In this document: positions 16,987 through 63,807 of the stretch, one piece after another | Layout of the letters: each line of letters starts with the position of its first letter | Position numbering within the stretch: position 1 is the stretch's first letter | IMG/VR virus record: IMGVR_UViG_2162886007_000107 | Location: 1-64,000 of that record | DNA length: 64,000 nucleotides | Reading direction: 5' to 3' (one strand) | The notes under the pieces: model-generated | Seen by the model: the letters and a program-made list of their open reading frames with translations, nothing else | Told to the model about the DNA's origin: nothing | The model's database searches: none | Translations under genes and position numbers: made by a program

Positions 16987-19900
16987 TTACCGAACAGGGA
17001 CAGCTTTTGGAGCGGTCGTACTCTTCTTGTTAAGTTCTTCCAACTGAGCAACCTGCTGAGCAGCGATCTGGGCTTGAGTACCACCCGTCTCTCTGATCGC
17101 ATTAACAATTTTCTCAGCCAAGCCATCCAGGTCGATAAGAGGTCCCGGTGCAGCATTTGGGTTGGACCTAGTATCTACTGGTTGTGGTTTAGGCGTGAGT
17201 TTAGGATTGTCCTGGCCGATCTTTTGGAACGTGCCTGGATCAGTATCCATTTGAGGGTTGTTAGTTGAACCACCTTTACGATCAGGCAGAGGGACCGGAG
17301 TATAAGTCTTCTCTGGAGCATTAGCTTCCTCAGTACCACGAGGAACCGCTGCTTCTACTGGAACTTGCGGAGGAGCAGGAGGCTCAGGAGTGAGCTTCTG
17401 TTCTTGTTGTTGGACTGGACCACCACCAGTAGTAGTATCCTGACCATTTTCCGCATTACCACCTGCCGCTTGGTTGAACTTATTCGCAGCTTCTTCGTTT
17501 ACGAAACCGAAGTGGATGTGACCACCCGTTGCTCCAGCAGAAGCTCTCTTGTACTCGTTGAGCACCAGGAAGTCTTTAGGAGTCAAGCCTGCTTGTTGAG
17601 CCAGACCTTTCACGATAGCTACTGCGTAATCACTACTGGCTATTCCATTAGTCAGAGTGAAGTCAAGAGCAAGTCCTTTTGCGTGTTTGGAGTTAGGCTT
17701 CTTCTGCTTATGCCAAGCGTCGTTCAATGCAGTAAACTGTTTGAACGTCTTCACATTAGTCTGAATCAGCTGACACATACGTTTAATGCCAGAATGTACA
17801 TCACCCCCAGCCGTAGTCTCTGCACTCTTCAGACGCAGTCCGGAATTGTCACCAGTCCGGTTAAGAACCAATCCACCACCAGTAGTGTCGTAACCACCAG
17901 ATGGATCTCCACCACCAGTACCACCATTAGCTCCGCTAATAGCGCCACTACCATACCAACCACCAGGAGCGCTGTTATTAGGGGTACCGTATTGGCTACC
18001 ACCACCAGGCGCTGGAGAAAGAGGAGGCATAGATGGAGCACCTCCACCGTACATCCCAGCAGAACCACCGCCACCACTAGAAGTAGCGCTTGGTGAACCT
18101 ACTGAATCCTTGGATGCATCGACACCACTTTCTTCATCAGCTTTCAGAGTTCCTTTACTGAGCTGATCGAGATAGCTTAGGTACAGCTTGTAGCGATCCT
18201 GCATTCCTGGTAGTTCGTTACCTCCGTTCAGACCACGGGCAGAGTATCCAAAATCACCCTTATCGGTGATGGATTGTAACTGCTTCGAGTTCTTAAAGAA
18301 GTTAACTGCAACAGCAGCCATTACGTTAGGGTCTTCACCCAGTTTCTCTGGATTGTTAACCAGATCCACTCCGATCTCACGACCAGTCTTCTCGTAATTA
18401 GCCTTACCAGTCAGTTGGACAAAACCACGTCCACGATACAGGTAGCCATCCCCTGGAGCCAAGTTACCCAGGGACTTCCCTTTAGCACCGCCGTATACAG
18501 CGTTCCCAATTGCTACTTCCCCTCCTGCAACCAAAGCACGAGCCTGATCCAGACTAGTAACTTCCCTGAAGAGTTTCATCAACCGGGTAGGGTCGGTGTA
18601 TTTAAGGTTTTCGACTGTCTTGGAATAACCACCAGTTTCGTAGTTAGTGAGCGCAAGCATTTCTGCAATTGCTCGTGGGTCAGTAAAGCCTTGTTTCAGC
18701 ATCTCACGAATGATCAACTGTTCGGCCAACTTCCGCGGTACCTTAACGCCGGTATCCTTACCTTCGTTACGTTGGACATTCGACATATCCAAGTGACTGG
18801 TATCAGAATCCCCAGTCAATGCCTTGTAACCAAACTGGTTACTAGGAGTACCGTAAACCCCGTTCAAGGTGTACAGGTTACCTGTACCTGCACCTCTTGC
18901 TACGTTAGTTCCGTATTGACCGCCGGCAAGCATGTCTCTACGGCTCTTGTACTGGTCAGCTGTCTGGACGTTTGCGTAGTGAGGAGTATAACCACCACCA
19001 GTTTTGTGCGGGGAGATCGAGTCTGCCCAAGCCTTGGTATTGGTCTTCCCAGCTTCCTTCTCTGGATCTCTGAGTTTGGCTACAGTAGAAGCCTCACCCA
19101 GCATCTTCACCATACGGTCCACTTTATCTGGTTTACCCGGAGAGCTAGTCCCTTCAAAAGGAGAAGCCCGTACGTTCCAGATAGGAGTGATGATTGAATC
19201 GGTAATCTTCGCCTTGGTCTCTACCAGCCCCTTAGCGATCTCAAAGCGAGCAGTAGCGCTCAGGGACTTCCAGACAACACCTGGTTGACCTTTGCGATAG
19301 TTGTTCACCAAGAGCACGTAGTTACTCATTACAGGAGCGAACCTGTCACGGAACCAGCGGCACCATTCATCACCATCCCCGTCCTTCAGACGGAACGCAT
19401 CTTTAAAGAGGCCAAACAGATCGCCAATCTGTCCTTTGAAGACCACCTCTTTACCGTTGAACACAAACAACGACTCGCAGTAGCGTTCCAGTTTCAGAAC
19501 AGCTTCCACACGCCAATGCACATCATCTTCGTTACCATAGCAGGCCAAACGAATCGCCGTAAGGAGACTCACCGCACCTTCATCTGGTAACAGATCTTTG
19601 ATGTAAATGGCAGAGACTTGAGGACCAATTTTGAAGTTGGAATTAAGGTCTTTCAACCGACCATTAATATCATCCAACTCTACCTTGGCTTTGAACCTTT
19701 GGTCACCGGTCATCCCGGAGTCGTAAGGCTGAGCCAATTGTTTCTCAAGCACTTCTTTTCTGGCAGCGAGAGCCACGGCACCTTTCGGAAGATCAATGCC
19801 TTGTTTCTCAGAGTCAGGAGTCTTTTTGTCGATGAACTTCTTCAGTTCTTCCAGATAGTTGTTAACCCGAATGACCGTGTCTTTCTGAGCAAGGATCGGA

Positions 19901-22900
19901 ACAGACTTATCGATCTTCGCCACAATCGAGTAGGGGTAAGGAGCTACACTACTCAATGTGTTGTGCGTCTGGGACGCGACACGGTAAACGTTCTGACTGG
20001 TAGCCTTGTCGTATTCCTCAAGACTACTGATCTTCACGGTGTCGAGGCAAGCCATGTAGGTCAAGAAGACCGGCTTGAAACGACCATTGAACCAGGAGAA
20101 GACGTTAGCAAGCTTAGCCTTATCCTTAGGGTCATCCACAAACAGTCGGAGCACATCGGCCAACGGAGCATCCTTAGACAACGATGCACGACCGTTACCG
20201 ATTACTACAAACTTGGTTAATGCTTTCTCAGCATTAAGAACCTTCTCGGCAAGATCACTCTCTACGTCAGAAATACCGTATTGAGTAAGACGCAGTTTTA
20301 CCTGTGTGCCTTCACCTGCTTTATACAACCTGTACAGACCGTAACCTACAGCACCTACAGCAAGTGCACCGAGAACAAACGGACTAGACAGCAAAGCAAG
20401 TGCACCAGTACCCAACCAAGCAGCACCAGTAAGCAATGCACTACCGGTAGCGGCAGCAGCGGTGCCAGCGACGGCACTCAGTTCAAGACCTGCCAAACCA
20501 GCAGCAGCCGAAGCCAACTGATAACCACCGTAAACAGTAGCGGCTGTGTCAACTGCACCCATTACCGAACTAGTGAGATCTCCATCCTCAACTAACCCCG
20601 ATTCTTGCAGGCTAGCTAGCGCGGTGCCGGTTGCCATGGAAACACCAGCAGCCAAACCGAATTTCTTCAGCTTAGTACCAGGCTTCTTCCGGTGCTCTGC
20701 GCGATCTTCCTTACGTTTCTTCCGAACCTCTGGATGTTCATCCTTATTATCCAGAATGGTATCCATGATGCTACCACCAGCTGCAGTCAGACTCTTGGTC
20801 TTCATGAGGGTAAAGATACCCTTGGCAATAGCGGTAATACCTGTGGTCATCAGGGGCAGGGCCTTGAGACCCAATTGAGCAAACCAGATAACTGGCTTAA
20901 TACCAGACCAAAGTGTCTTGGTGAAGAATGTTCCAATACCAGCAATGGCACTGAAGATCATCCCGAAGATTCCTTTCTTCTCTGGTTTCTCGTTGTTCCC
21001 CATCTTCCCTGTAATAGCTTCGCCAATCTTGATGATGGCTTCGTCACGTTTGTCGTGCTTCTTCTCCTTCTTCTTCTCTTCCTGATCAGCGAGGGAGTTG
21101 AGACGGGAATCCTTCCCATTAACGTGTTCGAGTACTTTTCTGCTGAAGTCGTCTGTACGGTTGTGGTTGTCCACACCGCTGTTAGCCCGCTCTTGTTCCT
21201 TGCGTGCTTCTACGACTTCCTCAGGGGCCTTAGCAGCCACATCTGGGTTAATGCCCTTGTTGTGTTCAGGAGTGGCGGTAACTGCTTCCAGTTCACTGGT
21301 TTCTGGCATCAGTTTGTAACCCCAATGATCCAGCAACAAGTGGTAGATGCGGTCGATCGAGTTGGTGATTGGACTGTAGTCAGCCTTCATCATTGAAGCG
21401 CCTTTATCAAAGGCCTTGCCGCCATACTCAATCGCCTTTTGACGGGCAACCCCCAACTTATCCCACAGCCAACCAGCCGCTTTCTTAGTAGCAGAATTAA
21501 GCTTGTTGATACTTACACCCATCGAAGTAGTCAGACCACGATCGTACTCTTCTTGGGTAATAAGGACATTCCCTTCTCGGTCATAAACCGGACCATCGAT
21601 TTCATTCCAACCATTCAGCGCAACAGGCTGACCATCTTTGCCTTTCTTGTAGTAAGCGCCTCCTGCGAAGCTCTTACCGTACAAGGTAGGTTCGGATGAC
21701 CCTTCCTTATAAACGTTCATCTGATAGAAACGATCAGCGACACGTTTACCCATCGCTTTAAGACGACGAGTTGGATCAAGCCAATCCCAGGCTTTACCAA
21801 TCCATTCGCGCACCTTGTTCAGCCCACCAAGAATTACTTCCTTGTTCTCAGCAGTAAACAGTTTTCCTGCCAGACGTTTTGCACCAATAATCGCACCGTT
21901 GGTTTTATCCACGACACTGTTCTTGATGTCAGCCCAGCTTTCGATAACCTTATCTGTAACCGCATCGTAGTAGTCGCCACGCTTACGTTTCCAGACTTCC
22001 AGAATAGGACTATTAGAATCGGCCTCATAGAGGTCTTCCTCATCCTCAGCCAGCTTAGCCTTAGCCATACCGCGAAGCTTAAGGTAAGAAGCAGCAGCCA
22101 AACCACCACCAGCTACCAACATGGCCGTCTTCGGATCATGCAATGCAACACCGGCCAGACCGCCCAACAAGCCGCCCAAGATGAGAGGTTCGTTACGCAG
22201 GACAGTATCGACGGACTTATTGAAGAACTCCTTGAAGGAGAACTGTTTAATCCGATCAATGATCTTGTCTTTACCCGAGCGCATATCCTGTTCTTCTTCC
22301 TTGGACATCTTCTTGCGAGCAGGAAGACGTTCGTGGATAGCGGTCAGTGTTTGGTTACGGGCATTAGCCAGACGCAATAGATCCGAAGTATCCTTAACCA
22401 GCAGGTCAAGACTACTGTTAACCGGGGTAAGGTCCAAGTTCTTAAGCGATTCCAATCCTTGGAAAGTACTACCAGCAGACTTAAGGCTGTCGGCAATGTC
22501 TTTAATACCGTCGAGGCGTTTGAAGGCTTCGTCAATACCAACGATCTTGACCGGAACAGGGTTACTGTCACTTGGAGCATTGGCGTTAGCACCAGATGCA
22601 GCGACAATAGGACCAACGTACGGAGGAATCTTCAACCCACCAGCACCTGGACCCATACCACGGGTTGGGTAGTCTGGAGTATCTGGAGCAGCATCCATTG
22701 TCTGCTTGCGATCAGGGTTCTTCAGATAGTCCTTGAGGATCTTGTCAATGAGTCCTTCATTGATCTCGTCCGTGTTACCGTACTTGCTCTTGGTGATGAT
22801 ACCGGCTTCACGCATTGCATCGTAATAACCGTTGGCTTTGTACAGGTCGATCTTGTCAGACAAGTCGGTCCCGAACATTGACAGGGAGTTAGATGCTTCA

Positions 22901-24903
22901 GCGTATTGAGTCAGTTTAGACCGAGCTTTCTCACCCTTCATGTAGGTAAGCATCTTGGCCTTAGTAACTTCGTCTGCTTCGGAGAACTTTTCAAGATCCT
23001 CTTCAGAGATGTTGAAGTTAATCATCATCATCTTGCGAATAGCTTCAGCAGTTTTAGCGTCGTGACCCTCAGCCTTCAGATCCATGAAGTTGTAAGGGTT
23101 GAAGCCCAGGTCTTTGTCAGCATCCTTAATAAGCTGGAATGCCAAAGCCTGTTTGTGTGCTTTGGAAAGAGCGTTGCCCTCATCAATGTGTCCAGCCAGG
23201 CTTAGCGCTTGGTTGGCTTGAGTAGAGAACTCGCCGCGACCCAGGATGTTGTTTGTTACTTTCACCAACCGTTGTTTCGAGTTGATGAACTGAGCCTTGG
23301 TATAGTCGTAGGACAATGGCTTGATGTCGTCATTGCCTGTACGGAACTTTTCAAAGCTTTGATGAAGCAAGCTGAACCAACGAGGGATCTCCTCATTCAG
23401 CGTACGTTCAGAACGGCGAGTCCATAGGGACTGTTCGTGGCCGTCTTCCAGAGTACGTTGTTGCATCTGGTAAGTCGAGCCATTAGAAGCCCACATGTTT
23501 TCAAGCACCGCACCTGCAACCTTGTTACCGGTTTTACGGGCAGCCTTGAGAACAACCCATTGAGCCTTAGGCATTGGCTTAGCGTCAGGTGCCAGGGTCG
23601 TAAGGTAATCGTCGTAAGTACTGAAGTCATCGAAGCCAGTACCACCGGTGTAATGCTTAGCCAGTGTGTTGACGATCTGTTCACCATTGTTGGTGACGTA
23701 GCTTGCCACGTTGCCCAAGTCTTCAAGACGCTTGTAGGCATTTTCAGCCCATTTGCTCAGATCAGGGAAACGTTTCTTGAACGCAGCAACGAGTGCTTTA
23801 CCTTTACCGCTCTCCATGGCTTTGGGAAGCTGATTAAGGAAGATACCGGCAGCAGCGTTACCCATGAGACTACCTACGTTGATAGGCATCCCTTCAGTCA
23901 TCTCAGCAACCATACGCAGGCTGCTGGTAACGTCTTGGATAGTGCTCATGGTTTCATTACGAGCGTCAGCCCCAAGTTTATCGTTCAGGAATTCACTGAA
24001 GCCACCGAACTTGCTCTTAACCGTACTGAATACCGACTCACGAATACTTTTACGCATTGCCTGGCTATGCGTGGTTTTCTCGTAGTCCGACATCTGCGAG
24101 TACTTATTAATAGCCCGCAGTTCTGTGATGGTCCGATGTTGAGCCGCTTCCTGGAACTTAAAGAAGGCAGCAGAGGTCAGGTGATGACGAGCAGTAATGT
24201 TGATCAGCAGCGAATCGTTCCGCTGTTGCACACGACGCTGGTAATCGAGCAAGTGTTCCAAGAGCTGGTTGGTACGAACGGTAGCCTGAACAACAGAGTG
24301 CATACTGGCGATCTGACGACCACCAATCTCTGTCATCATGGATACTTGTTCTTTACCTACCGCCTTAAAGGTTTCCCGAGTAAGTGCTCCGTTGGCGTTT
24401 TCCGAGTTGATCAGACTGCTGACTTCTTCGTCAGAAGTTTGTTTCATCTGCTCGTCATTGTCACCAGAATGACTAGAAGCTTCCCAGTCAGAAAAGTCCC
24501 GAGTAGAGAACTCAGTGAGGGCTTCCGGGATTTTATTAGGAACCTTCCCGGTAATAGCTCCGGCTGCCCGCTTAGCCAAATATTGAAGGTCCTGAACAGT
24601 TTCGTAGCTACCTTCTTGGAGTTCCCGCATGATCTCGTGACGACGTTGGTCAAAGTCACGGAGACTACGGAAAGTAGGTGCCCAGGTGCCCGGGAGAACG
24701 CGCTGGAGCGTTCTTATCTTTGCATCGGTGCTACCGGCAGTCCTTTCAACCAGGCCGTCCAGAAAGCCGCTGGTGAAGCTGCTGAAGAAACCCTTCTTTC
24801 CACCGGGATTGTCGAAATCCATATCGAAGCCCATGTCGCCTTCAAACGGATCTGGTCCCCAGTCGCTGAAGTCTGACATGTCTTCAAAATCATTATCACT
24901 CAT
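16987..24903 (-). CDS. Tape-measure / tail-associated peptidoglycan hydrolase (phiKZ gp181 position) with GH19 and M15-like peptidase domains
   Basis: ~2640 aa, helical with hydrophobic Gly/Ala segments; GH19 motifs YETGG and GDGYLYRGRGFVQLTGKANY; SKHAKGLALDF...GHIHF zinc-peptidase motif; divergent from the RNAP genes. Confidence 0.85.
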   Translation of the reverse strand: MSDNDFEDMSDFSDWGPDPFEGDMGFDMDFDNPGGKKGFFSSFTSGFLDGLVERTAGSTDAKIRTLQRVLPGTWAPTFRSLRDFDQRRHEIMRELQEGSYETVQDLQYLAKRAAGAITGKVPNKIPEALTEFSTRDFSDWEASSHSGDNDEQMKQTSDEEVSSLINSENANGALTRETFKAVGKEQVSMMTEIGGRQIASMHSVVQATVRTNQLLEHLLDYQRRVQQRNDSLLINITARHHLTSAAFFKFQEAAQHRTITELRAINKYSQMSDYEKTTHSQAMRKSIRESVFSTVKSKFGGFSEFLNDKLGADARNETMSTIQDVTSSLRMVAEMTEGMPINVGSLMGNAAAGIFLNQLPKAMESGKGKALVAAFKKRFPDLSKWAENAYKRLEDLGNVASYVTNNGEQIVNTLAKHYTGGTGFDDFSTYDDYLTTLAPDAKPMPKAQWVVLKAARKTGNKVAGAVLENMWASNGSTYQMQQRTLEDGHEQSLWTRRSERTLNEEIPRWFSLLHQSFEKFRTGNDDIKPLSYDYTKAQFINSKQRLVKVTNNILGRGEFSTQANQALSLAGHIDEGNALSKAHKQALAFQLIKDADKDLGFNPYNFMDLKAEGHDAKTAEAIRKMMMINFNISEEDLEKFSEADEVTKAKMLTYMKGEKARSKLTQYAEASNSLSMFGTDLSDKIDLYKANGYYDAMREAGIITKSKYGNTDEINEGLIDKILKDYLKNPDRKQTMDAAPDTPDYPTRGMGPGAGGLKIPPYVGPIVAASGANANAPSDSNPVPVKIVGIDEAFKRLDGIKDIADSLKSAGSTFQGLESLKNLDLTPVNSSLDLLVKDTSDLLRLANARNQTLTAIHERLPARKKMSKEEEQDMRSGKDKIIDRIKQFSFKEFFNKSVDTVLRNEPLILGGLLGGLAGVALHDPKTAMLVAGGGLAAASYLKLRGMAKAKLAEDEEDLYEADSNSPILEVWKRKRGDYYDAVTDKVIESWADIKNSVVDKTNGAIIGAKRLAGKLFTAENKEVILGGLNKVREWIGKAWDWLDPTRRLKAMGKRVADRFYQMNVYKEGSSEPTLYGKSFAGGAYYKKGKDGQPVALNGWNEIDGPVYDREGNVLITQEEYDRGLTTSMGVSINKLNSATKKAAGWLWDKLGVARQKAIEYGGKAFDKGASMMKADYSPITNSIDRIYHLLLDHWGYKLMPETSELEAVTATPEHNKGINPDVAAKAPEEVVEARKEQERANSGVDNHNRTDDFSRKVLEHVNGKDSRLNSLADQEEKKKEKKHDKRDEAIIKIGEAITGKMGNNEKPEKKGIFGMIFSAIAGIGTFFTKTLWSGIKPVIWFAQLGLKALPLMTTGITAIAKGIFTLMKTKSLTAAGGSIMDTILDNKDEHPEVRKKRKEDRAEHRKKPGTKLKKFGLAAGVSMATGTALASLQESGLVEDGDLTSSVMGAVDTAATVYGGYQLASAAAGLAGLELSAVAGTAAAATGSALLTGAAWLGTGALALLSSPFVLGALAVGAVGYGLYRLYKAGEGTQVKLRLTQYGISDVESDLAEKVLNAEKALTKFVVIGNGRASLSKDAPLADVLRLFVDDPKDKAKLANVFSWFNGRFKPVFLTYMACLDTVKISSLEEYDKATSQNVYRVASQTHNTLSSVAPYPYSIVAKIDKSVPILAQKDTVIRVNNYLEELKKFIDKKTPDSEKQGIDLPKGAVALAARKEVLEKQLAQPYDSGMTGDQRFKAKVELDDINGRLKDLNSNFKIGPQVSAIYIKDLLPDEGAVSLLTAIRLACYGNEDDVHWRVEAVLKLERYCESLFVFNGKEVVFKGQIGDLFGLFKDAFRLKDGDGDEWCRWFRDRFAPVMSNYVLLVNNYRKGQPGVVWKSLSATARFEIAKGLVETKAKITDSIITPIWNVRASPFEGTSSPGKPDKVDRMVKMLGEASTVAKLRDPEKEAGKTNTKAWADSISPHKTGGGYTPHYANVQTADQYKSRRDMLAGGQYGTNVARGAGTGNLYTLNGVYGTPSNQFGYKALTGDSDTSHLDMSNVQRNEGKDTGVKVPRKLAEQLIIREMLKQGFTDPRAIAEMLALTNYETGGYSKTVENLKYTDPTRLMKLFREVTSLDQARALVAGGEVAIGNAVYGGAKGKSLGNLAPGDGYLYRGRGFVQLTGKANYEKTGREIGVDLVNNPEKLGEDPNVMAAVAVNFFKNSKQLQSITDKGDFGYSARGLNGGNELPGMQDRYKLYLSYLDQLSKGTLKADEESGVDASKDSVGSPSATSSGGGGSAGMYGGGAPSMPPLSPAPGGGSQYGTPNNSAPGGWYGSGAISGANGGTGGGDPSGGYDTTGGGLVLNRTGDNSGLRLKSAETTAGGDVHSGIKRMCQLIQTNVKTFKQFTALNDAWHKQKKPNSKHAKGLALDFTLTNGIASSDYAVAIVKGLAQQAGLTPKDFLVLNEYKRASAGATGGHIHFGFVNEEAANKFNQAAGGNAENGQDTTTGGGPVQQQEQKLTPEPPAPPQVPVEAAVPRGTEEANAPEKTYTPVPLPDRKGGSTNNPQMDTDPGTFQKIGQDNPKLTPKPQPVDTRSNPNAAPGPLIDLDGLAEKIVNAIRETGGTQAQIAAQQVAQLEELNKKSTTAPKAVPVR

Positions 24904-24929
24904 TACCACACTCCTAGTGAGCTTAAGCC

Positions 24930-57731: not shown

Positions 57732-58198
57732 GTGTGTGTCCTCTAGCCCGGCTGCGCTTCAGCGGACCGGTCTGGGTTAATACATTTTTCCAGGTAACTC
57801 CTTAAGGAGAAAATGGTTTTCTTACCTAATTAAGGAAATTGGTTTAAAGGTTCTTATAGCATCTTTACAAGAGGACTTTTTGTTAACGGAGTTGTATCCT
57901 ATACATAATCGGGAAGAGAGAGCAGAGGAAGATAGTGAAGTAGGATACCGGGAAGAAGCCCTAGTAGACTACGAAGCAAAGCGGAGTGGGATACTAGAGA
58001 GCCTTCCTGGTATACTACTGAACGACTAGAAGCGGAGTAATCTTTAGATTACGACCTCCTGCTATCTCTGTAAGGCCGCAGGCCTTACTATAGTGTATTT
58101 TTTAACCTCACTTATTATCTTATTATTCAAAGTATAAAATCTTGTCTCAGTCCTACGGGATTGGGGTAAGGGGTTTATTTTGCATTTCGTTAGAAATA

Positions 58199-58215
58199 TT
58201 CAGACCTACATTACT
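58199..58215 (+). promoter_or_regulatory. phiKZ-type early promoter
   Basis: TTCAGACCTACATTACT upstream of the Ntn protease gene. Confidence 0.7.
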
Positions 58216-58317
58216 AAGGTGAAGTGAAAACAAGATTTATTAACTAACAATGTAATCATATTACTAACCTATTCAACATTCCGTTTAAGTTAGGTTAGAG
58301 AAGAGGAACTTGGGATA

Positions 58318-58944
58318 ATGACTACCGTAGCCGTTACCGACAAACAACTGGCAACTGATAGCCAGGCTACTCGTGCCATGACAGCTATGCCGTCGAATTT
58401 CCAGAAGATCTTTACTCCGGAAGAGGACAAGGAGTACTGGGAAGTAAATGGCGTCAAAATCATCGCATTCGGTCTGTGTGGCAATTACCACGCAGCAGAC
58501 TTCATCAAGCACTACCTGGCCAAGGGCATCGACTACCGCAGTCGTGTGGAACACGAAGATGAGCTGGACTTCGAAGCACTGATCATTGACGAGAACCACA
58601 ACATCTTCACCTGGAGCGTTTACGCCAACAAAGAAAAGCGTGGCGAAGATCAGTTCCTGGTGCGTGTACAACCACCGATCGCTGCTGGTAGCGGTTTCAA
58701 GTTTGCACTGGCAGTAATGTGCAACGGTCGGACCGCTGAGAAAGCAGTCCAGGTTGCAATTAAACTGGATCCGTTCAGCGGTGGTGAAGTGCAGGTCTTC
58801 GACTTCCCTGCCAAACCTGAGGTACCAAGTGTTCGTCCAGAGCACCTGAAACCGAAGGAAGAAGAGAAGAAAGACGACCCCAAGGCTGCTGAAGAAAAGC
58901 CGAAGGGTAAGGGTAAGAAAGAAGAACCAGTTAAGGCCGCGTAA
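58318..58944 (+). CDS. HslV / proteasome-beta-like Ntn-hydrolase protease
   Basis: M-TTVA N-terminal Thr, ATDSQAT, AAGSG and DPFSGG motifs; charged C-terminal tail. Confidence 0.85.
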   Translation: MTTVAVTDKQLATDSQATRAMTAMPSNFQKIFTPEEDKEYWEVNGVKIIAFGLCGNYHAADFIKHYLAKGIDYRSRVEHEDELDFEALIIDENHNIFTWSVYANKEKRGEDQFLVRVQPPIAAGSGFKFALAVMCNGRTAEKAVQVAIKLDPFSGGEVQVFDFPAKPEVPSVRPEHLKPKEEEKKDDPKAAEEKPKGKGKKEEPVKAA

Positions 58945-58960
58945 GGCACCTACCTGGCGT

Positions 58961-58995
58961 ATAACCCTACCTACCCCTGGGGTAGGTAGGGTTAT
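58961..58995. terminator. 17-bp inverted repeat
   Basis: ATAACCCTACCTACCCC-t-GGGGTAGGTAGGGTTAT. Confidence 0.7.
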
Positions 58996-59034: not shown

Positions 59035-59679
59035 ATGTACATCATTCTTGAGCAACCTGATGGTTCTTTGAACGTTACCGATACTGGTGACAGCTATACC
59101 AAGACGGAGATCATTCCGGCTACTGCTAACCAGGATCCGTACATTCGGGTTACTAACTTTGGGGGCAATGCTGTTCTCAATGAGAAGATTACTGGATCGG
59201 TAGAAATCGTTGGGGTACACGGCAACATCCTGGTGAGCAAGACCTTCAGAGAACTGGCCAAGGCAATCATCGAAAAGCCTCCGGCACATTGTTTCCATCC
59301 AAAGAAAGCATTGCTGGAATGGATGTCTATCAACGGCAACATTAACGAAGAAAAGATCCAAGCACTACTGCACAACTTTGTGCAGGGAGTGGATGTAAGG
59401 CTGGATGAAGTTCGATTGATTGTGCTGGATCCAAAGTTTGAAGAAAACCATTTGGTCTGCTTCATCGCCAAACAGGAAGGTGACTCTAACTTACTTCCTT
59501 TGGTTGCATTAAACGATCAGGGCGAAATCCACATGATTGGATATGCCGCTGATGAAGTCTTAAAGGCAATGGGGATGACCAGACACAGTAAAGTATCTGT
59601 TGGCTGGCAGCACAGTGGTGATCTGAAAAGTTACGAGCTTGTAACCGATCGCTATCAACAAATCTGGATTAAGGGATAA
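59035..59679 (+). CDS. Hypothetical protein, shared N-terminal module family member 1
   Basis: GGAGG RBS before ATG 59035. Confidence 0.75.
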   Translation: MYIILEQPDGSLNVTDTGDSYTKTEIIPATANQDPYIRVTNFGGNAVLNEKITGSVEIVGVHGNILVSKTFRELAKAIIEKPPAHCFHPKKALLEWMSINGNINEEKIQALLHNFVQGVDVRLDEVRLIVLDPKFEENHLVCFIAKQEGDSNLLPLVALNDQGEIHMIGYAADEVLKAMGMTRHSKVSVGWQHSGDLKSYELVTDRYQQIWIKG

Positions 59680-59682
59680 GCA

Positions 59683-59931
59683 ATGGCACTCAAAGTAATT
59701 CTGGAAGCACATAGCGGCAACGTAAAGATCTTGGGCTTTACTGAACACGGCCTTGAACTGGACATTCATAGAGCACAAAATACAACACCCGACCCCAAGC
59801 TTTACGTCTCCTACCATGGGTCGGCTGCCAACAGTTATGGTATCTACGGGTCTATCACCATCATTGATGACCACGGTAATGTCATTTACACGAAAACTCG
59901 TGAAGAACTGGGATGGAAGCCTAAACAATGA
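59683..59931 (+). CDS. Hypothetical protein, stand-alone module (member 2)
   Basis: 82 aa; aligns with the N-terminus of 59035. Confidence 0.75.
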   Translation: MALKVILEAHSGNVKILGFTEHGLELDIHRAQNTTPDPKLYVSYHGSAANSYGIYGSITIIDDHGNVIYTKTREELGWKPKQ

Positions 59932-60629
59932 TTGTACTCAATCGAGATGATCGTGGGGTAGCTGTAGAGTCCATGCAGGTACCAAACGGAACAGCCATCA
60001 ACATTACTTCTGATGGCAACGGTGTTCCCAAAGTCCTTATCGGTAAATCCTCGTCAATGCTGGTAAAACACACGTTAGTCATTATGACCGACACCGGGGT
60101 GATTATCGAGGAGCACAAAAGAGAATCGTTGATTGAAAAACAATTTGTGCGTTTTAGCAAGGACTTTTATTTCGCAACGTCTATTTGCTTAACTCCAGAA
60201 GGGCGAATCCTGGGAGGTCATCGAACTAAACAGGTTGCGATTTATACAGGCTCAACTTTGGCAGAGGGGTATGAAAAACCTCTTAAAGATTTGCTCGACA
60301 ACATTGTCCTGACAACCAAACAGGACGGACCTTGGAGAGCAGTAAATAAATTTAACAATGCTTCTATCCTTGATTTGAGTGATGAGATCAAATCAACACA
60401 CACATTCTGGGGATGGTCGGAAGAACCAGGTCATTTTAGTACTGGCGACTACACCAGCAACTACGTGGGCCTGAACATGATTAAACATAGTGAGGAAACT
60501 TGGGCTTTTTGGCAAGCAAACCTCAACACCAATCCAGAAGCAATTATTGATGCTATCAAACAAGACATCGTTGAGTCTACCCGACAAGCGCATGTAAAAG
60601 CTATCCTTTTGGAAACCGGTCGTAGTTAA
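59928..60629 (+). CDS. Hypothetical protein, family member 3
   Basis: ATGA coupling; 233 aa. Confidence 0.75.
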   Translation: MIVLNRDDRGVAVESMQVPNGTAINITSDGNGVPKVLIGKSSSMLVKHTLVIMTDTGVIIEEHKRESLIEKQFVRFSKDFYFATSICLTPEGRILGGHRTKQVAIYTGSTLAEGYEKPLKDLLDNIVLTTKQDGPWRAVNKFNNASILDLSDEIKSTHTFWGWSEEPGHFSTGDYTSNYVGLNMIKHSEETWAFWQANLNTNPEAIIDAIKQDIVESTRQAHVKAILLETGRS

Positions 60630-60742
60630 CTGGCTTTCCATATTAAAGATCAGGGGCGGCTCTGATCTTGTTTCACCAGCACGCACACAATACTCCGAAA
60701 TACCCAAGCAATACCTACTAATCAATAAACAGGAAATAGATC

Positions 60743-62155
60743 ATGTCCGTACATGTAAAGATGCTCGACAAAGATGGTGTAGGCTTCCGCTTCGTAACTG
60801 TGGAAGACCCAGTTTGTATTCAACTGATTCCAACCGATCCAGATATCGGCGGTTATCCAGTTCTGCGTATTGGCCGCACTCCAGCACCAATCATCAACTA
60901 CCCACTCACCAATGACGCCTATGTCATGAACGATGCGGGCGAAACCATTTCCAAGGTGTCCCTGAAGGAATGCCTGCGGGAAGTTGGTAAAGAACAATTC
61001 CGTCCTGACCGTAAAGGTTTGGCCGAACTCCCACCGTTTGAAGAACAACATCGGAAAGTCATCTCCGATAGTCTTCGTATGGGCTCCCTTTCCGTAAACA
61101 TTAAGACCGACGACCCTGTTGGCCTGGTTAAAGAAATGCGTGAAGCATTCAACGGGACGGACAAGAATCCAAATGGTAACCGCCCGCGTCAAATCCAACT
61201 TGATCCTAGCTTCAGACGCATCGAAGCTAGTGAAGAAAAGTGGTGGGTGTACAACGGTGATAAGCTCATAGACGTCCTCATGCTCGGTGCAAGAGACCTT
61301 GCAACGCTCAATGCATGCGTCTCTCCAAATGACCGTGTTGCATTTGACGAGTACCTAATCCTTAACTGGTCGGGTAAGGCTGAAACCCTTCAAGGATTTC
61401 AGAAAGAGATTGCCCGTAATAACAAACTCTACGATGCCTACATGTTGGTAGCGGGTACTACCGTTTGTACAGCCACATCTTTTACTCCATTGATGCCTGA
61501 TCCAGAATTGGGTGCTCATTTGTACGCCTTAATCAATGGGCAGAAAGTCCACGTTTCTGCCCTGACTATGGGCGACGTCATAATCAACAATGTGTTCTAT
61601 CTGAACCCGTTGTCGGTTGATCCAACAGTTGTTGATTGTGATCCAGAAATCATGACGTACATGTTGGCTGCATCTACCGTGTATTTCCATGCTCGTCCAG
61701 AAGAACGTACCGATGAAACAGGGATCAAAGGCTGGATTGATTACGCTTTCCATGATTCCAAGTACAACGTAACCTTGCCAAAGAGTGCGGTCGGTGAAGA
61801 AATCGACTCTACTATTGAAGCTGCTTCTACAGGGCTTTGGAAGAACGCCATCTTATCTTTGACCCAATACACCAAAAATCTTCTTGGCAACCCGGCTCTT
61901 TCTGACAAGATCCAGTTGTTACAGATTCGGGTTACAAAAGGTAGCGTGCAAAGTTTCAGAACCTTCATTACCAGAAATGGTGTGGCGGTCCGTATGTTCT
62001 GGGAAGATAGGGAAGACGCGGTAACTGACGAAGCAATCGAATTAATCAAGAAAGCTTTCGATAACCCTCGCAATTACTTCTGGTTTAACGTTTACCTGGA
62101 TGTAAAGGAAGGTTACGATAGTGATCTGATTGTCAAAGAAGTAAAAAGCAACTGA
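60743..62155 (+). CDS. Hypothetical protein, family member 4
   Basis: 470 aa with AGGA RBS; AYVMNDAGETI motif. Confidence 0.75.
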   Translation: MSVHVKMLDKDGVGFRFVTVEDPVCIQLIPTDPDIGGYPVLRIGRTPAPIINYPLTNDAYVMNDAGETISKVSLKECLREVGKEQFRPDRKGLAELPPFEEQHRKVISDSLRMGSLSVNIKTDDPVGLVKEMREAFNGTDKNPNGNRPRQIQLDPSFRRIEASEEKWWVYNGDKLIDVLMLGARDLATLNACVSPNDRVAFDEYLILNWSGKAETLQGFQKEIARNNKLYDAYMLVAGTTVCTATSFTPLMPDPELGAHLYALINGQKVHVSALTMGDVIINNVFYLNPLSVDPTVVDCDPEIMTYMLAASTVYFHARPEERTDETGIKGWIDYAFHDSKYNVTLPKSAVGEEIDSTIEAASTGLWKNAILSLTQYTKNLLGNPALSDKIQLLQIRVTKGSVQSFRTFITRNGVAVRMFWEDREDAVTDEAIELIKKAFDNPRNYFWFNVYLDVKEGYDSDLIVKEVKSN

Positions 62156-62174
62156 CAGTTGTTATGTTATACAA

Positions 62175-62755
62175 GAGGTGTGCTTTCTGAACCTCTAACC
62201 CAATTCCCCGAGAGGGAATCTTTGGTCCCTTAAGGGTGGAGCCGAAGTACGTAAGGGGATATGCTATTTCGTGACTGCTTGTGTATATCCGAACCCTATG
62301 GTGGTATGTCAAAGCCACAAGTCACAACTGTTTCTATTACATGCCCGCTGGACTGGGAGCCGTTGGCCGATAGGCGAATGCGGCAAAGCACGGTCTGGTA
62401 GGATTCTGAGATAGTTGAGGCGAACCTTTACGCCTGGGGGTGATTCTAGAAAATCCCCGGGGGTCTAGGTCTTGCCCGGATGGTTCCGGGTTTTCCGGGG
62501 GAGGGGACGGCAAAGGACGTTCTTTTCCCCGGCGCTATTTAAAGGTAACGTTTATGACGGGACCTAACGAATCCGTGTAAGAGACGGTATCTGGATAAAC
62601 CTAATGTTGCGGTCTTCTCTTTAGTCTGAATAAGACGGTCAGAGTTGTGCTAGATGTTAGGATGAAAAGCCTCATGACAGAGGGCGATTCAGACTAAGCG
62701 TATTCAGTACGTCTTAGAGAGCAGGGCGTCAATCCTGTGATCTGTCCCGATTTCC
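62175..62755 (+). ncRNA. Candidate large structured ncRNA (or several adjacent ncRNAs)
   Basis: No plus-strand ORF of 60 aa or more; many helices and a potential pseudoknot; flanked by two TATGTTATAC motifs. Confidence 0.45.
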
Positions 62756-62778
62756 TATGTTATACGAAAAAGTGTTTT

Positions 62779-62866
62779 GGAGAGATTCCCGAGTGGCCAA
62801 AGGGATCAGACTGTAAATCTGACGTGCGATCGCACTTCGTAGGTTCGAATCCTTCTCTCTCCACCA
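62779..62866 (+). tRNA. trnY: tRNA-Tyr(GTA)
   Basis: Cloverleaf with TCAGA-ctGTAaa-TCTGA, long variable arm, TTCGAAT, encoded CCA. Confidence 0.95.
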
Positions 62867-63018
62867 TGTTTATTCATAAGCCAAGTATCCAACAAGCGTA
62901 AGCCTGGATGCAGGGAACCACAAAGCCAACGCGCTGCCAGTGATTGGTTAGGCAAGCAGAAAGTAACATTACAGCCGATGGTACGGTGAAATCTACTTGA
63001 CTTATGAATAGCTTTATT

Positions 63019-63095
63019 GCGGCCATAGTTCAGCTGGTTAGAATACCCGCCTGTCACGCGGGTGGTCAGGGGTTCGAGTCCCCTTGGTCGCGCCA
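63019..63095 (+). tRNA. trnD: tRNA-Asp(GTC)
   Basis: CCCGC-ctGTCac-GCGGG, TTCGAGT, encoded CCA. Confidence 0.95.
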
Positions 63096-63511
63096 AACGT
63101 GTAGCTCTTGGCCCTGTGGGTCTCCTTGGTTGGTGTGGTGTTGTTACGCCAAGAGCTACACCCTATATTCGACGCCCCGCTACCCCGCGCCCTCGCCCGA
63201 AGAAAACACTTCCTGATTGTGGTGAGTCAGGTTCTGAGCATTTAATGCAGTGTAGTAAGAGTCTATATCGCCACGCATATTCCTTCTTCAGGTTTCATCT
63301 AGGTTTCCTGGAGAGAATCTTTGCCATTGTCCCCTGGTCCGGGCTGACGTTAACCGTGTCTATGGCAGAGTAAAGTTGTCCTGGCAAATAAGCCGGATAG
63401 AGCAAACGGTAGTTTCGTATTAAAAGTTGAAAGCAGCCTGGGATGCAGTTTGAGGTGGGTCCCCTATCGACAAGGCTAGGTTTAAAGCACTTACACTGAT
63501 CCGATTTATTA

Positions 63512-63587
63512 GGCCTAGTAGCTCAACTGGCAGAGCATCGGTCTCCAAAACCGAAGGTTCCAGGTTCGACTCCTGGCTACGCCGCCA
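63512..63587 (+). tRNA. trnW: tRNA-Trp(CCA)
   Basis: TCGGT-ctCCAaa-ACCGA, TTCGACT, encoded CCA; one C:C mismatch in the acceptor stem. Confidence 0.92.
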
Positions 63588-63731
63588 AATTCCCTTACCA
63601 GATCCATTGATCAAGGACAACCTGGTAAGGTAAGAAAACACGTAGGAGCGTGCGACGGTCTACCTCCCTTGACTTAGGTCATGAGCAACGTGCGGTATAA
63701 GTCCGAAGACACGTCAAGATTTTTGTTACAT

Positions 63732-63807
63732 TCCGTGTTAGCTCAGTTGGTAGAGCAAACGACTGTTAATCGTTTGGTCCCTGGTTCGAGTCCAGGACAC
63801 GGAGCCA
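63732..63807 (+). tRNA. trnN: tRNA-Asn(GTT)
   Basis: AACGA-ctGTTaa-TCGTT, TTCGAGT, encoded CCA. Confidence 0.95.

What the first reader, a model, noticed from the sequence alone, without database searches (positions are those of the whole stretch)
59035..62155. Four tandem genes share an N-terminal module fused to different C-terminal domains
Seen: each N-terminal ~70-80 aa ends alike: DPYIRV..ITGSVEIVGVHGNILVSKTFREL (59035), DPKLYV..IYGSITIIDDHGNVIYTKTREEL (59683, module only), VPKVLI..VKHTLVIMTDTGVIIEEHKRESL (59928) and YPVLRI..LTNDAYVMNDAGETISKVSLKEC (60743). The C-terminal parts (none to ~390 aa) look unrelated. The array follows the HslV-like protease gene. Inference: a modular adaptor/effector system in which a common docking domain brings variable domains to one partner, such as the protease ring (F-box-like substrate adaptors) or a phage compartment. 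A hairpin at 58961 separates the array from the protease gene, so that link is unproven.
Basis: partly seen in the sequence, partly recalled or inferred. Interest (0 to 1): 0.75.

Follow-up and report, generated by a model that had tools for sequence, protein, structure and literature searches.

The report
Shared N-terminal domain in four phage genes
Four neighbouring genes of a soil jumbo phage really do begin with the same small beta-rich domain, which belongs to a widespread but unstudied phage domain family that occurs alone or in front of unrelated protein tails, and nothing ties it to the protease gene next door.

Summary
Genes A (59035-59679), B (59683-59931), C (59928-60629) and D (60743-62155) are real, purifying-selected genes. 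All four start with a homologous module of about 75-85 aa.

- A-B: hhalign E 1e-8.
- C-D/external family: E about 1e-6.
- A/B to the rest: E 5e-5, 0 of 200 column shuffles.
- AlphaFold gives seven strands plus a helix for both A and D, and both models hit the same viral models.

The C-terminal parts are unrelated. The module matches 201phi2-1 gp34 and PHROG 10337. That family has no Pfam entry, no solved structure and no known function. It occurs alone (80-90 aa) or N-terminal to different tails in chimalliviruses and in small Acinetobacter and Vibrio phages.

Between two close phages the modules and flanks are 91-99% identical in DNA, while the C-terminal parts are 51-79% identical with saturated synonymous sites. 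This indicates cassette-like replacement.

The array sits with tRNAs in a variable slot between the HslV-like and PhuZ genes. The protease link is positional only: four of five other module-bearing phages lack an HslV-like gene.

The modular architecture is supported. A docking function is an inference, and the protease-adaptor idea is disfavoured.

The parts
58318..58944 (+). HslV-like N-terminal-nucleophile peptidase gene (208 aa). It is a neighbour of the array, not shown to be part of it. It has an MTT N-terminus, a GSG motif and a conserved Lys/Glu-rich C-terminal tail.
   Evidence: phrog_1040 E 1e-32. 36-40% identical to phage EL gp15 and relatives. Alignment A3.
58961..58995 (+). Terminator-like hairpin between HslV and gene A: 16-bp perfect stem, 3-nt loop, then a U-rich tract.
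   Evidence: strand folding -31 kcal/mol, z -3.4, 0 of 200 shuffles as stable. Sequence. The interval is 95% identical in L005.
59035..59679 (+). Gene A (214 aa). Module is residues 1-80 (59035-59274), followed by a confidently modelled alpha/beta C-terminal domain at residues 85-214 with no recognisable relatives.
   Evidence: AF2 pLDDT 88.4: strands 2-6, 12-16, 22-27, 36-41, 46-51, 55-59, 65-70, helix 71-79. No Pfam or PHROG hit. No PDB or AFDB fold match. Orthologues 47-51% identical.
59683..59931 (+). Gene B (82 aa), a module-only paralogue of A.
   Evidence: blastp A-B E 1e-7. hhalign 94.9%. Orthologues in L005, L003 and L014, and an 85-aa relative in L007.
59928..60629 (+). Gene C (233 aa). 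Module is residues 1-72 (59928-60143), followed by an unrelated C-terminal region of about 160 aa. Its start overlaps B's stop (ATGA).
   Evidence: Orthologues in L005, L007 and L014. The C module matches an external-only family profile at 80.8%, E 1.3e-5, and D plus external at 90.9%, E 1.2e-6. Shuffles 0/80.
60646..60669 (+). Weak hairpin in the C-D spacer: 10-bp stem followed by GUUU. Its significance is doubtful.
   Evidence: strand folding -15.5 kcal/mol, z -1.2.
60743..62155 (+). Gene D (470 aa). Module is residues 1-85 (60743-60997) and is nearly invariant among orthologues. A conserved middle region runs to about residue 340, followed by a variable end.
   Evidence: Alignment A1. Module 96/74/73% identical against 62/40/29% for the rest. 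D-module HMM versus 201phi2-1 gp34 E 7e-12, hhalign 97.5%. AF2 module strands 3-8, 15-20, 25-32, 38-44, 51-54, 59-62, 68-72, helix 74-81.
62156..62778 (+). Spacer without ORFs between D and the tRNAs. It is 94-99% identical to L005, so better conserved than the adjacent coding DNA.
   Evidence: No Rfam match.
62779..63807 (+). tRNA cluster (Tyr-GTA, Asp-GTC, Trp-CCA, Asn-GTT) sharing the variable slot with the array. PhuZ follows at genome 64697-65668, outside the window.
   Evidence: ARAGORN. Rfam. PhuZ match E 3e-60.

Best explanation
A-D are four paralogous accessory genes of a phiKZ/EL-like jumbo phage found in soil and rhizosphere samples. Each starts with one copy of a small all-beta domain of seven strands capped by a helix, about 75-85 aa long. 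The domain belongs to a widespread, uncharacterised phage family: 201phi2-1 gp34, PHROG 10337, and the N-terminus of PHROG 10807.

Shown:
- The domain is an autonomous unit. It is always N-terminal. It is either the whole protein or is followed by unrelated C-terminal regions.
- It is the more slowly evolving part of the protein.
- The C-terminal regions, and all of gene A, are replaced by recombination between related phages. The modules and the flanking DNA stay nearly identical.

Inferred mechanism:
- The module is a conserved protein-binding anchor that holds different, fast-changing C-terminal working parts on one common partner. That partner could be a host protein or a conserved phage structure.
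- Module-only proteins such as B would be minimal binders or competitors.
- The conserved module-coding DNA would also act as a recombination handle for swapping C-terminal cassettes.
- The position among tRNAs and homing-endonuclease genes, in a slot that differs between relatives, points to a host-interaction role such as takeover or counter-defence, not a core function.

The adjacent HslV-like protease is a neighbour by position only.
For: Homology and fold.

Autonomy of the module:
- L014's 595-aa protein shares only residues 1-80/110 with D. L014's 80-aa protein is a D-like module alone.
- The first 77-82 residues of gp34 recur in proteins of 87-378 aa in Phabio, RAY/MadMel, AH06, Proteus phage 10, Acinetobacter Obolenskvirus and Vibrio R16F.

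Conservation: the module is better conserved than the rest.

Mosaic replacement, window versus L005: 91-99% nt identity in flanks and modules against 51-79% in C-terminal parts. dS is 0.28-0.57 against more than 1.1 or saturated. dN/dS is below 0.3 everywhere, so all are functional genes.

Variable slot. Related loci carry extra inserts, a T4_Y16D-like gene and an HNH endonuclease.
Against: - No partner, localisation or activity is known for any family member.
- No C-terminal region matches any Pfam, PHROG, PDB or AFDB family, so 'working part' is an assumption.
- Stand-alone modules show the domain must do something on its own. That fits a self-sufficient inhibitor as well as it fits an anchor.
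- The A/B link to the rest rests on a moderate profile score (67.8% probability) plus predicted structures. The D model is of low overall confidence (pLDDT 48.6). B and C were not modelled.
- Transcription was not shown. The RNA-library contigs cannot be told apart from DNA carry-over.
Confidence: 0.45

Rival explanations
1. Protease-adaptor reading: the module docks on the phage HslV-like ring and delivers or regulates substrates, as SspB or F-box adaptors do.
For: The array lies next to the HslV-like gene in all five phages of this clade. There is a very weak structural resemblance of the module to SspB (VIA Z 3.1). HslV-family and SspB-like genes are known accessory genes of nucleus-forming phages (bioRxiv 10.1101/2023.02.24.529968).
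Against: - The five phages are close relatives, so their synteny carries little weight.
- phrog_1040 is absent from 201phi2-1, Phabio, Proteus phage 10 and Acinetobacter WCHABP1, all of which carry the module. In R16F the two genes are 10-36 kb apart. In RAY the module gene is gp198 and the HslV-family gene is gp116.
- EL and L008 have HslV directly followed by PhuZ. Seoulvirus has HslV followed by tRNAs. No module was detected in any of them.
- A strong terminator-like hairpin lies between HslV and A.
- Z 3.1 is noise level.
- The complex prediction of three HslV copies plus B gave no answer.
Confidence: 0.08
2. Virion-anchor or cargo reading: the module attaches its protein to the particle, either to the tail or head as tailspike N-terminal domains do, or as a packaging signal for injected proteins. 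The variable C-termini would then act outside or inside the next host.
For: - A conserved N-terminus with a swappable C-terminus and mosaic exchange is typical of tail fibres and of MuF- or Rhs-type polymorphic cargo.
- The top Foldseek PDB hits are the P22 tailspike head-binding domain (E 0.15-0.8). VIA gives Z 3.1 to P22 and Sf6 tailspike N-domains.
- The stand-alone module of Acinetobacter phage WCHABP1 follows the terminase, portal and head-morphogenesis genes.
- 201phi2-1 gp34 lies next to the tail sheath and tube genes.
Against: - The fold matches are not significant.
- The 201phi2-1 record marks neighbouring genes as virion proteins by mass spectrometry but does not mark gp34.
- The array lies among tRNAs and next to PhuZ, not in a structural block.
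- The proteins are small, and none shows fibre, depolymerase or toxin domains.
Confidence: 0.12
3. Self-sufficient binder reading: the module itself is the active part, for example a small inhibitor of a host enzyme or defence protein such as T4 Dmd or T7 gp1.2. The C-terminal regions would be secondary additions, and the four copies would be specificity variants.
For: - Stand-alone modules are common and conserved.
- The module is the most conserved part.
- Weak resemblances: VIA Z 3.9 to T4 Dmd over 52 of 57 residues, and one B orthologue against phrog_2949, a dGTPase inhibitor, at E 0.005.
Against: - Both resemblances are below significance and appear in single sequences.
- This reading does not explain why long C-terminal regions are kept under purifying selection (dN/dS 0.15-0.27).
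- It does not explain why those regions are exchanged as units.
Confidence: 0.25
4. No shared module: the similarity is a chance recurrence of a generic beta-hairpin motif in four unrelated small beta-rich N-termini.
For: The A/B profile matches NHL, WG and beta-propeller repeats through the same motif. Shallow profile comparisons were not significant.
Against: - With deeper profiles, the full-length colinear alignments are significant, and no column shuffle reaches them.
- The best non-self hits of the C, D and C+D profiles in the whole genome are the other array members.
- A and D have the same predicted strand order and hit the same BFVD entries.
- The 18-sequence alignment is nearly gapless with invariant Gly10 and Gly63.
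Confidence: 0.05

Closest known systems
201phi2-1 gp34 / PHROG 10337 (stand-alone form) and the N-terminus of PHROG 10807 (RAY gp198, MadMel gp200): uncharacterised phage proteins
   Same: The same domain by sequence. D-module HMM versus gp34 gives E 7e-12. The C profile versus an external-only profile gives E 1.3e-5. The predicted fold also agrees, since the A and D models hit these proteins in BFVD. The domain is always N-terminal or alone, and it lies in accessory regions near tRNAs and HNH genes.
   Different: Other phages examined carry one detected copy (for 201phi2-1). This clade has three to five copies in tandem. These include a divergent A/B subtype that no PHROG or Pfam model detects. 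The window's own proteins do not reach significance against the PHROG models directly.
N-terminal particle-binding domains of phage tailspikes and tail fibres (P22 gp9 head-binding domain, Sf6 gp14N)
   Same: The architectural logic is the same: a conserved N-terminal anchor, a variable C-terminal part and mosaic exchange at the junction. These are the weak top fold hits.
   Different: The fold match is not significant (E at least 0.15, Z 3.1). The genes are not in a structural block. No fibre or enzyme domains are present. gp34 is not marked as a virion protein.
Polymorphic effector systems with a conserved N-terminal trafficking domain (MuF-, Rhs-, PAAR- or LXG-type)
   Same: A conserved N-terminal domain, unrelated C-termini, tandem paralogues and recombinational C-terminal replacement.
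   Different: No known trafficking domain, no recognisable toxin domain and no immunity-like small genes after each copy. The module also exists alone.
Protease substrate adaptors (SspB for ClpXP; F-box proteins)
   Same: Only the idea of a small docking domain, plus the gene's position next to a protease gene.
   Different: No sequence similarity and no significant fold similarity (Z 3.1). The module family is mostly found in phages without an HslV-like gene.

Membership tests
gp34 / PHROG 10337-like N-terminal domain family | Significant sequence-profile match to family members from outside this clade | tested here: met
   D: hmmsearch versus gp34 E 7e-12, hhalign 96.6-97.5%. C: hhalign versus external-only profile 80.8%, E 1.3e-5. 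All-module profile finds gp34 in the 201phi2-1 genome at E 8e-7. A/B: P 0.011 against the external-only profile, but E 4.9e-5 against C plus D plus external, with 0/200 shuffles.
gp34 / PHROG 10337-like N-terminal domain family | Direct hit of the window's proteins to the PHROG 10337 model | tested here: not met
   Best E 0.066 for one of 18 modules. gp34, WCHABP1 gp42, Phabio_456 and MadMel gp200 do hit it, at E 9e-13 to 6e-43. Membership here is therefore by profile-profile transitivity.
gp34 / PHROG 10337-like N-terminal domain family | Same fold (seven strands plus a C-terminal helix, about 80 aa) | tested here: inconclusive
   The A and D models show the same element order and hit the same BFVD entries. 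Phabio aligns at rmsd 2.3-2.7 over about 80 columns. The D model is of low confidence, B and C were not modelled, and no model-to-model superposition tool was available.
gp34 / PHROG 10337-like N-terminal domain family | N-terminal or stand-alone position | tested here: met
   All 30-odd modules start at residue 1-3 of their protein.
HslV / ClpQ peptidase (neighbour gene 58318-58944) | Profile match and N-terminal Thr nucleophile after Met | tested here: met
   phrog_1040 E 1e-32 over residues 1-185. The sequence starts MTT and has a conserved GSG. No Pfam hit above threshold. Activity was not tested.
SspB-like or F-box-like protease adaptor | Fold or sequence similarity to a known adaptor, and co-occurrence with the protease | tested here: not met
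   VIA Z 3.1 to SspB is noise level. phrog_1040 is absent in 4 of 5 module-bearing phages. The complex prediction gave no answer.
Tailspike/tail-fibre N-terminal anchor domain (P22 gp9 type) | Significant fold match and virion association | tested here: not met
   Foldseek E 0.15-0.8, probability at most 0.2. VIA Z 3.1. gp34 is not flagged as a virion protein in its record. Virion association of A-D cannot be tested here.
Polymorphic toxin/effector locus | Recognisable C-terminal toxin domain with a cognate immunity gene | tested here: not met
   No Pfam, PHROG or PDB family for any C-terminal region. No small ORF follows each gene.

The most novel reading that the evidence does not exclude
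The module is a dedicated docking domain of a polymorphic effector system of jumbo phages. One conserved hub would receive a changing set of C-terminal effectors that phages swap by recombination at the module boundary. Candidate hubs are a host protein, the phage-nucleus shell or import machinery, or a protease ring. Module-only proteins would act as regulators. This would be a new, portable targeting signal for nucleus-forming and other phages.
Probability: 0.2. Interest if true: 0.75.

Novelty: new variant of a known kind. Interest (0 to 1): 0.5.

Why it matters
The work defines a widespread phage domain of about 80 aa that has no Pfam entry, no structure and no literature. It shows that the domain behaves as a portable N-terminal unit, and it identifies a clade in which it has expanded to a tandem array with cassette-like exchange of C-terminal parts. 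If the module is a targeting or docking signal, it would give a handle on how accessory proteins of jumbo phages are directed to a common site. It would also flag a set of fast-evolving candidate host-interaction proteins. The array offers a natural experiment: one module-only protein and three fusions in a single operon-like block. The work also removes a tempting but unsupported link to the HslV-like protease.

Tried and rejected
- Pfam and PHROG scans of A-D gave nothing.
- tblastn and megablast of A, D and the whole region against GenBank phages gave no match.
- IMG/VR scans with A and with the D alignment gave no relatives.
- ESM Atlas look-ups of A, C and D returned poor stored models (pLDDT 0.31-0.39) and no credible neighbours. 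The beta-propeller-like features for C reflect the generic hairpin motif.
- The exhaustive HMMER search with the A/B profile returned only the own clade plus repeat proteins.
- Fold searches of the A model against PDB (Foldseek and VIA wide), AFDB clusters and the ESM Atlas found nothing significant.
- PDB sequence searches with the D, C and module profiles found nothing credible. The ferritin hits at E 0.01 fall in a badly aligned variable stretch.
- D-type profile searches of phiKZ, SPN3US, Goslar, EL and pEa_SNUABM_29 found nothing, although the tool warns that an empty answer proves little. Goslar nevertheless has a BFVD structural hit.
- Module HMMs against ORFs around distant HslV genes (L008-L013) found nothing.
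- Complex prediction of three HslV copies with B gave no answer, because the partner folded poorly.
- Laying public runs on the region shows the phage in rhizosphere, soil, indoor and plant samples. The RNA-library contigs cannot show transcription.
- The weak hits to T4 Dmd, T7 gp1.2 (phrog_2949) and SspB were considered and rejected as not significant.
Full report
**Setting**

The window is the first 64 kb of a 236,430-bp viral record. It encodes split multisubunit RNA polymerase beta subunits, a large terminase and virion proteins of the phiKZ/EL type. Gene order around the finding matches phage EL:
- terminase;
- a small gene;
- two minus-strand genes, PHROG 2921 (EL gp13-like) and DUF7484 (EL gp14-like);
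- then an HslV-like gene at 58318-58944.

In EL and in metagenomic locus L008, HslV is followed directly by the tubulin PhuZ. In this genome PhuZ lies at 64697-65668 (E 3e-60). Between HslV and PhuZ lie the four genes of the finding and four tRNA genes. Near-identical DNA occurs in rhizosphere, soil, indoor and plant-associated runs.

**The observation**

- A: 59035-59679, 214 aa.
- B: 59683-59931, 82 aa.
- C: 59928-60629, 233 aa.
- D: 60743-62155, 470 aa.

A has a good ribosome-binding site, B follows A by 4 nt, and C overlaps B by ATGA. The hairpin after HslV has a 16-bp perfect stem at 58961-58995. Its energy is -31 kcal/mol with z -3.4, and a U-rich tract follows, so it is terminator-like.

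None of A-D matches Pfam or PHROGs. The C-terminal parts do not resemble each other.

**Is the shared N-terminus more than chance?**

At first only A and B were clearly related (blastp E 1e-7; hhalign 94.9%, E 1e-8). C and D gave P values of 0.04-0.8.

An exhaustive HMMER search with an A/B profile gave a warning. That motif is therefore a generic beta-hairpin and proves nothing alone.

The case was settled by collecting relatives.
- Four related phages from Logan/ENA assemblies carry the array.
- AlphaFold2 models of A (pLDDT 88.4) and D (48.6 overall, 55-80 in the module) show the same succession of seven strands and a helix at nearly the same positions.
- Although A and D share nothing else, the two models retrieve the same BFVD entries. 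These are a 228-aa 201phi2-1 protein, a 173-aa Phabio protein (rmsd 2.3-2.7 over about 80 columns), Goslar and MadMel proteins, and several phage proteins of 67-90 aa.
- A profile of all 18 modules finds 201phi2-1 gp34 (228 aa, N-terminal match) at E 8e-7 in that genome. I infer that gp34 is the 228-aa BFVD entry from its length and organism; this was not checked by accession.
- The D-module HMM scores gp34 at E 7e-12, with hhalign at 97.5%.
- The first 77-82 residues of gp34 recur in Phabio_456, RAY gp198/MadMel gp200, AH06_213, a Proteus phage 10 protein, the 90-aa gp42 of Acinetobacter Obolenskvirus phages and an 87-aa Vibrio R16F protein. These are PHROG 10337 and the N-terminus of PHROG 10807. 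Neither has a known function, and none of these proteins has a Pfam family.

With these eight external sequences the profile comparisons become significant.

| Comparison | hhalign probability | E-value | Column shuffles reaching the score |
|---|---|---|---|
| C vs external-only profile | 80.8% | 1.3e-5 | 0/80 |
| C vs D + external | 90.9% | 1.2e-6 | 0/80 |
| A/B vs C + D + external | 67.8% | 4.9e-5 | 0/200 |
| A/B vs D + external | 21.8% | 1e-3 | 0/80 |

The z-scores against the shuffle nulls are 5.5-11.

A C+D+external HMM built without any A/B sequence ranks B as the best non-member among 2,385 ORFs of the genome. The combined HMM finds exactly four copies, all in the array. I regard the shared module as established for C and D, established for A and B with each other, and well supported but not beyond doubt for the link between the two pairs.

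**The module as an evolutionary unit**

Array composition varies within the clade:

| Locus | Gene order after HslV |
|---|---|
| L005 | A, B, C, D |
| L003 | A, B, D-like of 667 aa (no C) |
| L007 | 85-aa module-only, C-like, D-like of 624 aa (no A) |
| L014 | 80-aa D-like module-only, C-like, T4_Y16D-like gene, B-like, 595-aa protein |

The 595-aa protein of L014 shares only its first 80-110 residues with D.

The module is better conserved than the rest: 96/74/73% against 62/40/29% in D, and 92% against 66% in C.

Between the window and L005, DNA identity is 91-99% in the flanks, in B and in the C and D modules. It is 51-79% in the C-terminal parts and about 60% through most of A. Synonymous divergence is 0.28-0.57 in HslV, B and the C and D modules. 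It exceeds 1.1 or is saturated in the C-terminal parts and in A. dN/dS stays below 0.3 throughout. This is the signature of replacement by alleles from more distant phages, not of local positive selection, and it shows that all four are functional genes.

**The protease link**

The array sits in a slot that varies between relatives, and it is separated from HslV by the terminator-like hairpin.

phrog_1040 is absent from 201phi2-1, Phabio, Proteus phage 10 and Acinetobacter WCHABP1, all of which carry the module. In R16F the genes are 10-36 kb apart. In RAY the module gene is gp198, while the HslV-family gene is gp116, described as an accessory, nucleus-localised protein (bioRxiv 10.1101/2023.02.24.529968).

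HslV-bearing EL, SPN3US-type phages and L008-L010 show no module. The complex prediction of three HslV copies with B returned no answer and counts neither way.

**What it most likely does**

No member of the family has been studied. No C-terminal region has a recognisable family or fold. The A C-terminal domain is confidently modelled but unmatched.

The anatomy fits a conserved binding or anchor domain carrying variable working parts:
- an autonomous and conserved N-terminal domain;
- unrelated and rapidly exchanged C-termini;
- stand-alone copies;
- tandem paralogues;
- a position among tRNAs and homing endonucleases.

The likely field is host interaction. This is an inference, and I give it 0.45.

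The rivals are:
- a self-sufficient small inhibitor, 0.25;
- a virion anchor or cargo signal, 0.12;
- the protease adaptor, 0.08;
- chance similarity, 0.05.

**Comparison and novelty**

The closest known thing is the uncharacterised gp34/PHROG 10337 family itself. The window's C and D are divergent members, and A/B form a further subtype that no existing model detects.

The architecture works like tail-fibre anchors or polymorphic effector loci. However, the defining features of those systems were tested and not met: a significant fold match, virion association, or toxin and immunity domains.

The finding is a real, moderately interesting new variant of a catalogued but unstudied domain family. 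It is not a protease-adaptor system.

Noticed in passing
window 57732-58317: About 590 bp upstream of HslV holds no ORF over 50 aa, yet it is 95-99% identical to L005, which is better conserved than the HslV coding sequence (85-93%). It contains a terminator-like hairpin at 58140-58171. In L007 and L003 a 164-aa-type ORF occupies this position, but tblastn finds no remnant of it here.
   Followed up: partly
window 62156-62778: A 620-bp ORF-free spacer between D and tRNA-Tyr is 94-99% identical to L005, next to a D C-terminus that is only 51-77% identical. It has no Rfam match. It may be a regulatory or RNA element, or a recombination boundary.
   Followed up: partly
window 59035-59679 versus L005:1239-1892: Gene A is only 51% identical in protein between two phages whose HslV is 94% identical and whose B is 89% identical. 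Its synonymous sites are saturated. The whole gene, module included, appears to have been replaced.
   Followed up: yes
window 58843-58944 (HslV residues 176-208): The HslV-like protein ends in a Lys/Glu-rich low-complexity tail that is conserved in all four clade members and lies beyond the PHROG match. Its function is unknown.
   Followed up: no
L014:7485-7985 and L006:5134-5919: Related arrays carry extra inserts. One is a T4_Y16D-like gene (PF26092 / phrog_839) between the C-like and B-like genes. The other is an HNH/NUMOD4 endonuclease between the D-like gene and PhuZ. Module genes in 201phi2-1, MadMel and R16F also sit next to HNH endonucleases.
   Followed up: partly
window 62779-63807: The tRNA cluster Tyr, Asp, Trp, Asn follows the array. 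Seoulvirus phages have a similar tRNA set directly after their HslV gene, so the tRNA block is the older occupant of this slot.
   Followed up: partly
window 16987-24909 (- strand): A very long ORF of 2,640 aa starts with GTG. It was not examined.
   Followed up: no
window 62828-62840 in public runs X1-X3, X6: The tRNA stretches collect hundreds-fold depth and many variants in metagenome contigs. These presumably come from other organisms' tRNAs and are not informative for this phage.
   Followed up: no
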